DNA of 63,072 nucleotides, filler included, from Guillardia theta CCMP2712 (lineage: Eukaryota; Protista; Cryptophyta): NCBI RefSeq assembly GCF_000315625.1. It is 8 parts of 8 records of this genome, joined end to end, with 100 filler letters (N's around TTAATTAATTAA, not from the genome) between each part and the next. Parts side by side here need not be neighbours in the genome. Positions count along the whole stretch, not along the records: positions 32,309 to 35,346 come from NW_005434084.1; 7 more parts are not named here. One strand, written 5' to 3'. Made by a program: the position numbers and the translations under genes. The notes under the pieces were generated by a model, which was given only the letters and a program-made list of their open reading frames with translations, made no database searches and was not told the origin of the DNA. Numbering within the stretch: position 1 is the first letter of the stretch; each line of letters begins with the position of its first letter. Below, one piece after another: positions 32,151-35,346 of the stretch.

Positions 32151-32679
32151 AGGTTGTTTTGAAGGATTGCATTCAACTTTTGGATCGATTGAAGCTGCTA
32201 TCTCCAGANNNNNNNNNNNNNNNNNNNNNNNNNNNNNNNNNNNNNNNNNNNNTTAATTAATTAANNNNNNNNNNNNNNNNNNNNNNNNNNNNNNNNNNNN
32301 NNNNNNNNTTTACAAGGACGGGAGGATCAGATTGCGCACCTCAAGCCGATGTACTCGCAAGTCTCCTCCCCTCCTCCTATGCTACGTCTGATGCCCTGAG
32401 CAGCGAGGTTGCGTCGGTCCGAAAAGACCAGGTCAAGCTCATGCGAGACAGTGGATGAGAGGAGTGGGTGGGAGAGGGGAGGAGGAGGAGGAGGGAGGGG
32501 GAGGGATTGGGAGACCTGAGGAGGATAAGAGGATGGTCTGAATGTTTACTCATCATGTATATTTTACAGATCAAGGACGTATGACGACAAGGTATAACAT
32601 ACCCTCCTCTCCCCTTCCCTCCTCTGCCTGCCTGCCTGCCTCCACTCGTTTCCCAGTTCTTCATTCCTTTCCCCTGCAC

Positions 32680-33783
32680 AGGCCCTCCTTCTTCGGGACA
32701 GCGCCCACCTAGTGGCCGACTACGGTGCTCATGTACCCAAGTGAGTTTCACCCTCACACAGCTCTCTTCTCATCTCCTCTTCAGGAAAGGGGAAGTCATG
32801 CACAGGGAAACTGAAGGAGCCGTCGGAGAAGACAAAGTGAGAAGGATCATGGAGAAGAGGGAGAGGAGAAGGAGAGAAGAGGGAGAGAAGAGAAGGGATG
32901 AGAGGAGAGGAGAGGCGGAGGAGGAGGCGGAGGAGGCAGAGGAGGGAAGGGGGCGAGGAAAGGAGAGGGGGAGGAGCGCTCAACAGTCTCCAGGCGCTGC
33001 TGCACGAGGATCACAAGAGGCTAAGGAAGGACTTCTCCAACATGAGGAGGCAACCCGTCTGACCTCCTCGAGTTTGCGCTGACTCCCTGGATCAGGGACA
33101 GGAGGCAGCTGGAGCAGGATGAGCACAGCACTGTGGATGTAGGACGGGGACCCCTTCCTTCCATGCCCATGACTCGTGGTGGCAGGTGAGGGGGGCCAAG
33201 GGTGCCAAACGAGCTGAGAAAATGTACGACAACGACGAGCCCTCCTCCAGCAGCCACCGAAGGCACGCTAGCCACAGTGGCGCCCTGACCTCTGGCAAAG
33301 TCAAGATGGTGAGCCCAACTTGTCAAACTCATGCTCCTAAGTCAACCCTCTTGCAGATCATGGCTGGGCTGTGCGGAGTCCTCCTGGTGCTGCTGGGTAA
33401 GAGCTGGGAAGGGCTGGGTTTCCTCTTCCGACCCTTCGGCTTTGCAGGCATCCTCGTCCTCTTCCGTCAGTCTCGTTCAAGTCGTTCGTCAAACGCCGCT
33501 GAGTCCGGCGACAGGCAAATCCCTGCTGCTCCTCCAGCTGCCTTCCTCCTTCGCTCCTCCTCCTCCCCCTCCCTCCTCCTCCTCCTTCGCTCCTCCTCCT
33601 CCTCCTCCTCCTCCTTCGCTCCTCCTTCGCTCCTCCTCCCCCTCCTCCCCTCCCCTTCTCACTCTCATGCGTGTCTTAGGATTCCCCTGCGGCAAGGAGA
33701 CCCTCGATCCATCCCGGTAAAAGTCAACTCACCCGCTCCCTCAAGGCTCATCCCTTGCATCGCAGAAGCACATGACCTTGTAG
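32680..33783 (+). CDS. 3' exons of a single-pass membrane protein
   Basis: Spliced exons give the TM segment IMAGLCGVLLVLLGILVLF, then RQSR, ending KHMTL*. Confidence 0.4.
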
Positions 33784-33879
33784 CCCCGAGGCCTCTGCTG
33801 GACTTTGAGCTGAGAAAGCAGCTGGGAGCTGGCGGCCGCATCGGCCTGGATGGCTCCGGCTCCAGCAACGGAGTCAGGC

Positions 33880-35346
33880 TCACCCAAGACTTTTGCTGTC
33901 CTGGCCGTTGGCATGCAACAAGGCTGACAAGCTTGAGATGAATGAATGCACATACTCCTCTATCCTGAGCCCGTTGATGGCATCCTCGAAGGATTCGAGC
34001 AGTGGAGACTCCAGCACGATCCCAAGAGCGTGCTGGACGCTCGCATGCTGCACCAGCGGTTAACGGACTTTGACATGGTCAGTCCACCATACTGACCTGG
34101 AGGATGTCCGGAGAAAGCCAGTCCAGCAGGCTGTAGGAAGTTGTCAGGAGCTCGTCAAGGTCGTCAAGACTCTTGCAAGCTACCGGAAGGGGATCGTCTC
34201 CAGAGGGCCAGCTGACGAGCTGAGAAACGGCGTCAGATGTCTGGTCCCCATGGAGCAGCAAGGGATGCCTGTAGGTCGTCACGAAGACCTCGTCGACGTA
34301 GAGGTAGTCCGAGTCTGCTACCACGTACTTCACCTGCGCCGAGCTTCACCCTCCTCTCCTGCTTCCCCTCCCTCCTCCCCATCACCCGCTGCGTTCGGTT
34401 CTGGACTGTGACGATCTTGGCGGTGTGTTGACAAGCATGGAGGGGGGTCGTCAAGTCGACCCTGAGCGTTCTCAGCTCACTCTTAGAGGCCACTGGGCTG
34501 ATACACACAACGTCCCCCTCCTTCAGCTCGTCCGCAAACATGTGTTTGACATCCGGTGTAGTCACGTTGCCGGACGAGGCAAGTACCGGCAAGACATGCT
34601 TCCTTGAGAGCTGCAGCTGCAAGGCTTGTCCTTGACTCGTTCTTGCCGTGACTATCGACGTCTGCCTTGCTGTCTCATGCTCGAACACGAAGACAACTCG
34701 CGCGAACCTCGTCTTGTTCCTACGGTTGTCATGTGACAGGATCCCTGTCCCCCGGGGTTTGACGTCCTTGATCCTGATCCGTTCAGCCCTGACCCCCTCA
34801 CTGCCCGCCCCTTCTGCTGCCTCCTCCACTTGTCTCAGCACGCTTCCGTCCACACTGAAACATCCTGCCAGCACTGACTTTCCTACAGCAGTACACTGAG
34901 AGTTCGCAGTTATGTACGCCTGCTGGGAGACAGGGGCTGCCGCACATAGTTAGTTCATGTTCAGCCTCCCGTTCCTCGAGTTGCTCCTCCTCTCACCTCC
35001 AGCACTGTAGACGCTGAGGAAGTTGCAGCGGCTGCCGATGGAGGCGAAGTATGGGAGGGTAACGTTGTTGCAAGAGGCGTGCATGGCGGCGCAGGAGTCG
35101 TAGCAGATCTGCGTGAACTCCTTGTCGTCGTTGGTGCACAAGGGGAAGTGGTAGGCACAGATGACTTGCTTGAGGGCTGTGACGCAGGCAGCTGAGGGCT
35201 GACTCTGAGAGTAGAGCTGAACCATCTTCTCAGCATAGGCCAGGTCCGTCTTTGCCTGCGAGCAGGACTGGGAGACCCCAGAAAGTGAGCGAGGAGAGCA
35301 GAGGAGAGGGTGGAGGGACAGCCAGCAGGTCACCTGGAGGACGGTG
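33880..35346 (-). CDS. Frizzled-type cysteine-rich domain + Hint/Hog autoprocessing domain protein, 5' partial
   Basis: CVTALKQVICAYHFPLC..QICYDSCAAMHASC..RC spliced in frame (intron 34937-34996) to G|CFSVDGSV, LSRKH, ADELKEGDVV, YVDEVFVTTY and a helical tail. Confidence 0.8.

What the first reader, a model, noticed from the sequence alone, without database searches (positions are those of the whole stretch)
33880..35346. Frizzled/Smoothened-type CRD joined to a Hedgehog-type Hint (Hog) autoprocessing domain
Seen: a Cys-rich exon with Fz-CRD spacing (C..LK.V.C...FP.C...IC...C......C...C) splices in frame, via a phase-1 intron with a ctaac branch, to G|CF, an SxxH version of the Hint TxxH motif, A.EL.EGD, YVDEVFVTTY and a helical tail where Hedgehog has its sterol-recognition region. 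Established: Hog domains cleave at G|C and can attach a sterol to the upstream domain, and Smoothened/Frizzled CRDs bind lipids. Inference: this algal protein may release a lipid-tagged, lipid-binding CRD, combining the two lipid-handling modules of animal Hedgehog signalling in one gene. The 5' end, including any signal peptide, is lost in the gap.
Basis: partly seen in the sequence, partly recalled or inferred. Interest (0 to 1): 0.85.

Follow-up and report, generated by a model that had tools for sequence, protein, structure and literature searches.

The report
Algal Frizzled-like domain fused to Hedgehog-type self-cleaver

Summary
The piece is a 3038-nt Guillardia theta CCMP2712 scaffold carrying the partial gene GUITHDRAFT_149673 on the minus strand. 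GenBank calls it a hypothetical protein; UniProt's automatic name is "FZ domain-containing protein".

- **Gene model.** Spliced transcript contigs show seven exons. The cysteine-rich exon joins in frame to the exon holding G|CF, but the true acceptor is at 34936, not 34865, which adds a 24-residue linker.
- **Hint/Hog identity: firm.** The AlphaFold2 model has pLDDT 89. Its best PDB match is Drosophila Hedgehog-C (1AT0, E 6e-10). A family profile hits Hedgehog at E 1e-15 to 3.5e-17.
- **Fz identity: good by sequence only.** Pfam Fz gives E 7.5e-7 (30.1 bits, cut-off 32.1); the orthologous exon in L001 passes at 33.3 bits. Ror2's CRD is the best PDB sequence hit, and protein-language-model neighbours are Fz clusters. 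The fold model was too poor to test.
- **Recurrence.** The same architecture occurs in Hanusia phi and in three more diverged metagenomic lineages, one with a signal-peptide-like N-terminus.
- **Selection.** dN/dS is 0.26 overall and 0.12 in the CRD.

Self-cleavage is likely. Sterol tagging and lipid binding are untested. I rate it a new variant of the known Hog protein kind.

The parts
35334..35346 (-). Last 13 nt of the upstream exon (..TVLQ), cut by the scaffold end. The transcript continues at least 255 nt further 5'.
   Evidence: Loose ends of the X1/X2 contigs match 35338-35346 and then run on (table 7). L001 extends it by 35 nt, reading ..FNTKAFC TVLQ.
35268..35333 (-). Intron 0 (66 nt, GT-AG, in frame, so it reads as ORF).
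   Evidence: The transcript contigs stop matching at about 35271 and resume at 35338. Splice sites checked. The orthologue L001 has a 21-nt indel here.
34997..35267 (-). Exon 1: Fz-type cysteine-rich domain, Fz cysteines 3 to 9, plus one cysteine of an extra pair.
   Evidence: Pfam Fz E 7.5e-7, 30.1 bits, profile 36-91/110. The orthologous exon in L001 scores 33.3 bits, above the cut-off. Ror2 CRD alignment. dN/dS 0.12.
34937..34996 (-). Intron 1 (60 nt, phase 1, GTGAGA...CTAAC...CAG).
   Evidence: Records 2 (X1) and 10 (X2) are contiguous across 34997|34936 (table 8). Same junction in P0054..
34386..34936 (-). Exon 2: 24-residue linker holding Fz cysteine 10 (NSQC), then the Gly-Cys-Phe cleavage motif and the Hint core.
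   Evidence: Pfam Hint E 1.4e-6. AF2 pLDDT 89.4 and Foldseek 1at0 E 6e-10. Alignment.
34857..34865 (-). G|CF: predicted autocleavage site. The Cys is the thioester nucleophile (Gly119, Cys120, Phe121 of the partial model).
   Evidence: Coordinates. GCF is conserved in 14 of the 17 aligned Hog sequences and in L005.
34674..34694 (-). VFVFEHE: Glu sits at the position where relatives have the Asp of F.HDH. I take that Asp to be the counterpart of Hedgehog's sterol-activating Asp46.
   Evidence: Alignment. The His is invariant (H70). L005 has Thr at the Asp position.
34584..34610 (-). LSRKHVLPV: Hint block B, an SxxH version of TxxH.
   Evidence: Alignment. The His is invariant across 29 sequences (H97).
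34737..34760 (-). KPRGTGIL in the scaffold. Reads give KPGDRIL, the canonical Hint GD motif, so this is a probable assembly error or an allele.
   Evidence: One and two letters left out at 34745/34749 and G>C at 34754 in X1, X2 and X13 (tables 3-4). L001 and P0001 read KPGDRIL.
34334..34385 (-). Intron 2 (52 nt, GT-AG, phase 0).
   Evidence: Joint 34329/34382 with cut +4.. P0002 and P0054 both read ..NRTQR|VKYVV.
34269..34333 (-). Exon 3: last Hint strands, VKYVVADSDYLYVDEVFVTTY (motif J with Thr in place of Hedgehog's Cys).
   Evidence: 100% identical in L001.
34220..34268 (-). Intron 3 (49 nt, GC-AG), retained in the GenBank model.
   Evidence: Joint 34219/34269. The MMETSP ORF P0002 reads TTYSSSAGPLE. 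P0054 retains it.
34184..34219 (-). Exon 4 (36 nt): SSAGPLETIPF, the start of the conserved post-Hint region.
   Evidence: The ST.AG.LET.PFR motif is shared with protist Hogs.
34131..34183 (-). Intron 4 (53 nt, GT-AG), retained in the GenBank model.
   Evidence: Joint 34130/34184..
34097..34130 (-). Exon 5 (34 nt): LLDWLSPDILQ.
34048..34096 (-). Intron 5 (49 nt, GT-AG).
   Evidence: Joint 34047/34097..
33880..34047 (-). Exon 6 coding part: conserved tail (..VLESPLLESFE..) to stop TGA 33882-33880. It occupies the position of Hedgehog's sterol-recognition region.
   Evidence: P0002 ends ..DSKSLG. The tail aligns with protist Hogs including crGt Hog1/2.
33765..33879 (-). 3' UTR, overlapping the last exon and 3' UTR of a convergent plus-strand gene.
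   Evidence: The X1/X2 contigs run through 33765-34047. Plus-strand GT-AG intron 33716-33764 is backed by RNA reads of X20..

Best explanation
This is a genuine, expressed, spliced nuclear gene of Guillardia theta (GUITHDRAFT_149673, 5'-truncated by the scaffold end). It encodes a precursor with a divergent Frizzled-type cysteine-rich domain, a short Cys-containing linker, and a Hedgehog-type Hog domain. The Hog domain is a Hint module beginning Gly-Cys-Phe, followed by the conserved C-terminal extension typical of protist Hog proteins.

Most likely mechanism:
1. The protein enters the secretory pathway. This is inferred from the disulfide-rich domain and from the signal-peptide-like N-terminus of the full-length relative P0004.
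2. The Hint module performs an N-to-S acyl shift at Gly119-Cys120 of the partial model. Cys and the block-B His are present.
3. The thioester is resolved by a nucleophile, releasing the CRD-bearing N-terminal fragment from the Hog domain.

Shown here: the gene structure, the expression, the junction, the Hint fold, sequence-level Fz homology, recurrence of the architecture, and purifying selection. Inferred only: secretion, cleavage, and the resolving nucleophile. I put about 35% on a sterol or other lipid adduct and about 35% on simple hydrolysis, conditional on cleavage.
For: - **Transcripts.** Spliced contigs in two studies join all exons in frame. The MMETSP ORF P0002 matches the spliced C-terminus exactly.
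- **Identity.** NCBI EKX30787.1/XP_005817767.1, on a contig of 3038 nt, the same length as the piece. UniRef names it 'FZ domain-containing protein'.
- **Hint.** Pfam E 1.4e-6. A family profile that includes this protein hits Drosophila Hh at E 3.5e-17 to 1.5e-15 and human Shh at 2e-12. The AF2 model has pLDDT 89.4 and pTM 0.86. Foldseek's top hits are 1at0 and 6tyy at E 6e-10 and 6e-9, TM 0.81 by target, ahead of inteins. Atlas neighbours are Hint and Hedgehog clusters.
- **Catalytic residues.** Cys1, the block-B His and the His of F.H[DE]H are conserved.
- **Fz.** Pfam E 7.5e-7 for the window, 8e-8 (33.3 bits, above the cut-off) for L001, 2.7e-6 for Hanusia, and 1.3e-4 and 5.4e-5 for P0004 and L004, which cover profile positions 1-93. 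The best PDB sequence hit is the Ror2 CRD, with six cysteines aligned. The three nearest named Atlas clusters all carry Fz (0.89, 187-194 shared features).
- **Recurrence.** CRD followed by GCF-Hog occurs in Hanusia phi, L001, the P0004 clade (uninterrupted 573-aa ORF with one N-terminal hydrophobic segment) and L005.
- **Selection.** dN/dS against L001 is 0.26 overall and 0.12 in the CRD. Exonic indels are limited to one in-frame triplet.
Against: - Both Pfam hits on the window's own sequence fall just under the gathering cut-offs (30.1 vs 32.1; 28.5 vs 29.7).
- The CRD structure model was poor (pLDDT 58.9). Neither Foldseek nor VIA-align gave a significant Fz-fold match.
- The N-terminus, and therefore any signal peptide, is not in the piece.
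- The position I align with Hedgehog's sterol-activating Asp is Glu here and Thr in L005. Thr of TxxH is Ser. Two insertions interrupt the Hint core.
- No biochemical evidence of cleavage exists for any protist Hog protein that I could find.
- One true RNA-seq run (X20, about 6% sampled) showed no reads over this gene.
Confidence: 0.7

Rival explanations
1. The Hog domain attaches a sterol to the C-terminus of the released fragment, and the Fz-type CRD is itself a lipid- or sterol-binding module. The product would then be a lipid-tagged lipid binder uniting the two lipid-handling modules of animal Hedgehog signalling.
For: - The G|CF motif, the Hint fold nearest to Hedgehog-C, and a strongly conserved post-Hint tail in the place of the sterol-recognition region.
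- Glu could still act as a general base where Hedgehog has Asp46. The structure 6tyy is a D46H autoprocessing mutant, by its PDB title.
- From established knowledge of those proteins, Fz, Smo and related CRDs bind lipids.
Against: - The tail shows no detectable similarity beyond the first residues of Hedgehog's post-Hint region.
- The Asp position is not conserved in the clade: E, E, D, T.
- Nothing Smoothened-specific was found in the CRD.
- The groove residues could not be examined because the fold model failed.
- No lipid assay exists.
Confidence: 0.22
2. The Hint module is a degenerate, non-cleaving domain, and the protein acts as one uncleaved extracellular or membrane-associated polypeptide.
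For: Substitutions at TxxH (Ser), at the Asp position (Glu) and at motif J (Thr for Cys), plus two insertions in the Hint core. Pfam Hint scores are below the cut-off.
Against: - The nucleophilic Cys preceded by Gly and both invariant His residues are retained in every Fz-Hog lineage.
- The Hint region is under purifying selection (dN/dS 0.34).
- The model folds confidently as a complete Hint module.
Confidence: 0.12
3. The cysteine-rich exon is not a true Frizzled-family domain, only a disulfide-rich module whose spacing resembles one by chance or convergence.
For: The window's hit is sub-threshold. The PDB sequence hit is weak (E 0.008), with Kazal-type hits just behind it. There is no structural confirmation.
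Against: - Fz is the best Pfam family in every Fz-Hog sequence scanned, at E 1e-4 to 8e-8, and one orthologue passes the curated cut-off.
- FZ_RECK and Folate_rec also appear as weak secondary hits on the L001 exon.
- UniProt's automatic pipeline names the protein FZ domain-containing.
- The Atlas feature neighbours are Fz clusters.
- P0004 aligns to Fz profile positions 1-93, and I could place all ten canonical cysteines by hand.
Confidence: 0.1
4. The fusion is an artefact: two neighbouring genes or a chimeric assembly.
For: The scaffold is tiny (3 kb). The GenBank model has errors. One transcript contig (X2) fuses this gene with its convergent neighbour.
Against: - The junction lies within one spliced reading frame in two independent transcript assemblies.
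- It is collinear in the independent metagenome contig L001.
- The same order occurs in an uninterrupted 573-aa ORF, P0004, found on several contigs.
Confidence: 0.02

Closest known systems
Protist Hog proteins (Burglin 2008, PMC2362128), including Guillardia theta crGt Hog1/Hog2
   Same: The same Hog domain type: GCF start, F.H[DE]H, [TS]xxH, VRYV..., and the conserved tail ST.AG.LET.PFR...LESP.L..FE. Same organism and a secreted-precursor logic.
   Different: crGt Hog1/2 and their relatives (P0005, P0010, P0017) carry a different Cys-containing N-terminal region (FVC..NIKAL...), and Pfam found only Hint in those relatives. That paper stated that only GmGIN1 and Hoglet have recognisable N-terminal domains. 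Here the N-terminal domain is Fz-type.
Animal Hedgehog (HhN-HhC; PDB 1AT0, 6TYY, 6TD6, 7E2I)
   Same: Gly-Cys-Phe junction, the Hint fold (TM 0.81 by target), the block-B His, and a C-terminal extension after the Hint module.
   Different: The cargo is an Fz-type CRD, not the Hedge signalling domain. Asp46 is replaced by Glu, and the motif-J Cys by Thr. The tail is not detectably similar to the animal sterol-recognition region. Cholesterol transfer is not shown.
Nematode warthog/groundhog/quahog and choanoflagellate Hoglet
   Same: A Hog domain used as a module behind lineage-specific secreted N-terminal domains (PMC2362128, PMC1636047).
   Different: Their N-terminal domains (Wart, Ground, Qua and others) are not Fz-type, and they come from different lineages.
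Frizzled-type CRD proteins (Frizzled, Smoothened, sFRP, ROR1/2, MuSK, carboxypeptidase Z, RECK)
   Same: The cysteine pattern and the core motif C..(8)..C.Y.FP.C...(10)..C...C......C. Best PDB sequence hit is the Ror2 CRD. Pfam Fz and FZ_RECK hits.
   Different: There is no 7TM, kinase, NTR or protease partner. An extra Cys pair sits between canonical Cys2 and Cys3, and the Cys9-Cys10 spacing looks long. The domain is fused to an autoprocessing domain. The ligand is unknown.

Membership tests
Hint/Hog autoprocessing domain (Pfam PF01079; Hedgehog-C type) | Nucleophilic Cys (or Ser) as the first residue of the module, preceded by Gly | tested here: met
   AG|CFSV at 34868-34851, aligned with GCF in 14 of the 17 aligned Hog sequences and in L005.
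Hint/Hog autoprocessing domain (Pfam PF01079; Hedgehog-C type) | Block B TxxH, with the conserved His | tested here: met
   SRKH. The His is invariant across 29 sequences (H97). Thr is replaced by Ser, as in P0004 and P0024.
Hint/Hog autoprocessing domain (Pfam PF01079; Hedgehog-C type) | Hint beta-fold closest to Hedgehog-C | tested here: met
   AF2 pLDDT 89.4, pTM 0.86. Foldseek 1at0 E 6.3e-10 with TM 0.81 by target, and 6tyy 5.8e-9, ranked above all inteins.
Hint/Hog autoprocessing domain (Pfam PF01079; Hedgehog-C type) | Profile match at the curated threshold | tested here: inconclusive
   Window exon 2 alone scores 28.5 bits against a cut-off of 29.7, E 1.4e-6; P0054 scores 25.8. The family profile that includes it hits Hedgehog at E 3.5e-17, and relatives reach 70-75 bits.
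Hint/Hog autoprocessing domain (Pfam PF01079; Hedgehog-C type) | General-base Asp (Hedgehog D46) needed for sterol transfer | tested here: not met
   Glu in Guillardia and Hanusia, Asp in P0004 and most protist Hogs, Thr in L005. This is a conservative change, so function may persist.
Hint/Hog autoprocessing domain (Pfam PF01079; Hedgehog-C type) | Actual autocleavage or sterol transfer | not testable with these tools
   Needs biochemistry.
Frizzled-type cysteine-rich domain (Pfam PF01392) | Ten conserved cysteines in canonical spacing | tested here: inconclusive
   The piece holds Cys3-Cys10. Cys3-Cys8 align to the Ror2 CRD with two short gaps of 1-2 residues. Cys1-2 lie in the missing upstream exon. 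By my assignment from its Cys positions and the Pfam match to profile 1-93, full-length relative P0004 has all ten (C94, 102, 146, 155, 162, 173, 177, 184, 203, 233) plus an extra pair.
Frizzled-type cysteine-rich domain (Pfam PF01392) | Profile match at the curated threshold | tested here: inconclusive
   The window scores 30.1 bits against a cut-off of 32.1, E 7.5e-7. The orthologous exon in L001 passes at 33.3 bits, E 8e-8. UniRef's name is 'FZ domain-containing protein'.
Frizzled-type cysteine-rich domain (Pfam PF01392) | Mainly helical Fz CRD fold with a lipid-binding groove | tested here: inconclusive
   The AF2 model built from 5 sequences has pLDDT 58.9 and is all-helical. No significant Foldseek or VIA match; the only VIA hit I know to contain a CRD is FAM155A (7cm3_B), Z 5.7, within the noise.
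Smoothened-type sterol-binding CRD specifically | Sterol-contact residues of the Smo CRD groove | not tested
   There was no reliable model or Smo alignment. The nearest matches are generic Fz, ROR and RECK.

The most novel reading that the evidence does not exclude
Cryptophytes and related environmental protists make a secreted Frizzled-type CRD that a Hog domain releases and covalently lipidates (by sterol or another lipid), and the CRD binds lipid. If so, the autoprocessing module of Hedgehog ligands and the lipid-binding fold of Frizzled and Smoothened receptors were already combined in one signalling or lipid-carrier protein outside animals.
Probability: 0.2. Interest if true: 0.8.

Novelty: new variant of a known kind. 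Interest (0 to 1): 0.55.

Why it matters
Hog domains are known across protists, but their N-terminal cargo has been described as short, lineage-specific and unrecognisable. Here the cargo is a recognisable, strongly constrained Fz-type CRD, a fold otherwise known mainly from animal Wnt and Hedgehog receptors. The pairing is conserved across several diverged algal or environmental lineages.

This gives a concrete, testable protist model for two questions: what Hog domains did before Hedgehog existed (which nucleophile, which cargo), and what Fz-type CRDs bind outside animals.

It also corrects the public gene model of GUITHDRAFT_149673 (two retained introns, a wrong 3' end and a probable 3-nt assembly error).

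Tried and rejected
- **CRD structure.** Prediction from a 5-sequence alignment gave pLDDT 58.9. Foldseek against PDB found nothing below E 0.7. VIA-align wide gave a top Z of 6.3 among unrelated helical proteins. I treat this as no test of the fold.
- **Word-index homology searches.** They returned almost nothing because of the length window: only P0001/P0002, then P0003/P0054, then P0004 itself. The exhaustive representative search gave 53 Hog relatives.
- **Exon-versus-intron conservation against L001.** Uninformative: introns are 77-96% identical and exons 89-100%. I used indel placement and dN/dS instead.
- **Single origin of the fusion.** A quick tree groups the Guillardia clade with the P0004 clade (SH-aLRT 91). 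L005 pairs with P0041 elsewhere on a weak backbone, so one origin is neither shown nor excluded.
- **Literature.** Searches for Fz together with Hint or Hog found no description of this architecture. The library is limited, so this is not proof of absence.
- **RNA-seq run X20.** It gave no reads over the gene with about 6% of the run sampled. I do not take that as silence.
- **Full spliced protein.** Exons and database proteins were used instead.
Full report
**What the piece is.** Places 32309-35346 form a 3038-nt scaffold. A protein search returned [quoted passage not shown] (EKX30787.1 / XP_005817767.1; P0054, 432 aa). Its longest contig is exactly 3038 nt. The same sequence in UniRef (A0A0C3SGJ9) is auto-named "FZ domain-containing protein".

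**Gene structure (observation check).** The gene is on the minus strand.
- I laid public runs on the piece. Runs X1 and X2 hold spliced contigs, which behave as transcripts. X13 holds unspliced contigs collinear with the window, which behave as DNA.
- The transcript pieces and joints define the exons, high to low: ...-35334 (cut by the scaffold end), 35267-34997, 34936-34386, 34333-34269, 34219-34184, 34130-34097 and 34047 downward, with stop TGA at 33882-33880.
- The introns are 49-66 nt. All are GT-AG except 34268-34220, which is GC-AG.
- The Cys-rich exon is joined in frame (phase 1) to the exon with G|CF, and the CTAAC lies 10 nt upstream of the acceptor. That acceptor is at 34937/34936, not next to GCF. 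Twenty-four residues (APVSQQAYITANSQCTAVGKSVLAG) therefore separate the CRD exon from the Cys.
The real sequence is ...TTY-SSSAGPLETIPFR-LLDWLSPDILQ-HASVQ...KSLG*, confirmed residue for residue by an MMETSP ORF (P0002).
- The GenBank model P0054 keeps these two introns and has a spurious 3' exon.
- The transcripts continue at least 255 nt upstream of the piece, so the N-terminus is indeed missing.
- At 34745-34754 the three runs that cover the site (X1, X2, X13) differ from the scaffold by a net 3-nt deletion plus G>C. The real protein therefore reads KPGDRIL, the canonical Hint "GD", not KPRGTGIL.
- My partial model is 378 aa.

**The Hint/Hog domain.**
- Exon 2 alone hits Pfam Hint at E 1.4e-6 (28.5 bits, cut-off 29.7).
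- An exhaustive profile search found 53 relatives. Most are protist Hog proteins that pass Pfam Hint at 46-75 bits.
- In alignment the Guillardia protein shares with them GCF, GD, F.H[DE]H, [TS]xxH, VRYV.., and a strikingly conserved post-Hint tail (ST.AG.LET.PFR..L.PG.LQ....LESP.L..FE).
- A 29-sequence profile headed by the Guillardia sequence hits Drosophila Hedgehog (6td6, 6tyy, 1at0) at E 3.5e-17 to 1.5e-15 and human Shh at 2e-12. BIL/intein-like chains follow only at about 5e-3.
- AlphaFold2 on that alignment gave pLDDT 89.4 and pTM 0.86. Foldseek's best PDB matches are Hedgehog-C 1at0 (E 6.3e-10, TM 0.81 by target) and 6tyy, followed by inteins. ESM Atlas neighbours are Hint and Hedgehog clusters.
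- Membership of the Hedgehog-type Hint family is therefore firm.
- Differences from animal Hedgehog: Ser for Thr in TxxH; Glu where relatives have Asp in F.HDH, which I align with Hedgehog Asp46 (Thr in L005); Thr for the motif-J Cys; and two insertions in the core.

**The cysteine-rich domain.**
- Pfam Fz is the best family for this exon, at E 7.5e-7 (30.1 bits, cut-off 32.1, profile 36-91 of 110).
- The orthologous exon of metagenome contig L001 (92% nt identity over this exon) passes the cut-off at 33.3 bits, E 8e-8. It has weaker secondary hits to FZ_RECK and Folate_rec.
- Hanusia phi (P0003) gives 2.7e-6. P0004, P0057 and L004 give 5e-5 to 3e-4 but cover profile positions 1-93. L005 gives 3.8e-4.
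- A profile of these CRDs finds the Ror2 CRD (7me4) as its best PDB sequence hit (E 0.008), with six cysteines in register.
- Language-model feature search of the P0004 CRD returns three Fz clusters as nearest named neighbours (0.89, 187-194 of 256 features).
- From the Cys positions of P0004 and its Pfam match, I assign all ten canonical cysteines plus an extra pair between Cys2 and Cys3. By alignment, the Guillardia piece contains Cys3-Cys10 (Cys10 sits in the linker, NSQC) and one Cys of the extra pair. Cys1-2 must lie in the missing exon.
- Structural confirmation failed. The 5-sequence AF2 model had pLDDT 58.9 and no meaningful matches.
- I conclude that this is a divergent Fz-type CRD, with good sequence evidence and an untested fold. 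Nothing singles out Smoothened.

**Is the fusion real and conserved?** Yes.
- Besides the transcripts, the same order (CRD, linker, GCF-Hog, conserved tail) is found in several places:
  - L001, collinear and about 90% identical;
  - Hanusia phi, EukProt EP00960 P011666;
  - an uninterrupted 573-aa ORF, P0004, seen with 10 close variants in ENA, JGI, NCBI and Logan assemblies;
  - L005, an intron-containing metagenome locus with CRD, GCF and tail on one strand.
  - L004 carries the N-terminal region and the CRD, and is cut before any Hog part.
- P0004 has a single hydrophobic segment near its N-terminus (residues about 34-58, ending AGSA) and none elsewhere. That is consistent with a signal peptide.
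- Between the window and L001, dN/dS is 0.26 overall: 0.12 for the CRD, 0.34 for the Hint module and 0.36 for the tail. The only exonic indel is one in-frame triplet.
- A quick tree groups the Guillardia clade with the P0004 clade (SH-aLRT 91). L005 falls elsewhere on a weak backbone, so the number of fusion events is open.

**How it most likely works.** By analogy with Hedgehog (established for animal Hh), the precursor is secreted. Cys120 attacks the Gly119 carbonyl to form a thioester, and a nucleophile resolves it, freeing the CRD fragment.
- The residues for the first step are present and conserved, so I rate self-cleavage as likely (about 0.7).
- The second step is open. The conserved tail sits where Hedgehog has its sterol-recognition region, and Glu could act as a base. 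However, the Asp position varies within the clade, and the tail is not detectably similar to the animal region.
- I therefore split the outcome roughly evenly between lipid or sterol transfer and hydrolysis.
- That the CRD binds lipid is inference from other Fz-fold domains only.

**Comparison with what is known.**
- Burglin (2008, PMC2362128) found Hog proteins in many protists, including Guillardia (crGt Hog1, Hog2). Those sequences, read from the paper's supplement, are the other paralogue type (N-terminus FVCSVANIKAL...) and not this gene.
- That paper states that only GmGIN1 and Hoglet have recognisable N-terminal domains.
- Four literature searches found no paper linking Fz and Hint/Hog domains in one protein.
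- The thing is thus a new variant of a known kind: a Hog protein with a previously undescribed, recognisable cargo domain. In databases it is only auto-labelled.

**Verdict.** The architecture is supported. The functional story is untested. Interest is moderate to fairly high for people working on Hedgehog and Wnt evolution, tempered by the sub-threshold Fz scores, the failed CRD fold test and the absence of any biochemistry.

Noticed in passing
window 32316-33960 (+ strand): A convergent gene built from at least 12 micro-exons (26-123 nt) with 44-165 nt introns, two of them apparently GC-AG. The spliced frame ends ..KHMTL* just after 33766 and has one C-terminal hydrophobic helix (IMAGLCGVLLVLLGILVLF). 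Its 3' UTR overlaps the Fz-Hog 3' UTR, and run X2's contig fuses the two transcripts.
   Followed up: partly
window 34745-34754: The scaffold differs from all three runs that cover the site (X1, X2, X13) by a net 3-nt insertion plus one substitution in a G run. The reference reads KPRGTGIL, while the reads and the orthologue L001 give KPGDRIL. This is a probable assembly error or an allele.
   Followed up: yes
window 34131-34268 and 33883-33960 (GenBank model P0054): The public model GUITHDRAFT_149673 retains two introns, which adds about 46 spurious residues inside the post-Hint region. It also replaces the true C-terminus with a wrong-frame 3' exon.
   Followed up: yes
L002:41-1762, L003:98-1858 (P0004/P0057 clade): An uninterrupted 573-586 aa Fz-Hog ORF recurs in metagenome assemblies from several sources. 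It has an extra N-terminal Cys-rich stretch and an insertion of roughly 100 residues inside the Hint module. The organism is unknown. Its relative L004 does have introns.
   Followed up: partly
L005:111-1460: A third, intron-containing Fz-Hog lineage in a JGI metagenome. The position of Hedgehog's Asp46 is Thr (..AHTH..). Its Hog part pairs with the database fragment P0041 in the tree.
   Followed up: partly
window 32466-32512, 32881-32945, 33542-33660: Long purine-rich or pyrimidine-rich (GGA/CCT-type) low-complexity tracts sit inside introns of the plus-strand gene. The read tool skipped them as repeats.
   Followed up: no
window 34100-35346, run X20: The one true RNA-seq run of the species label, about 6% sampled, gave no reads over the Fz-Hog gene while covering the neighbouring gene. 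This suggests low or condition-dependent expression.
   Followed up: no
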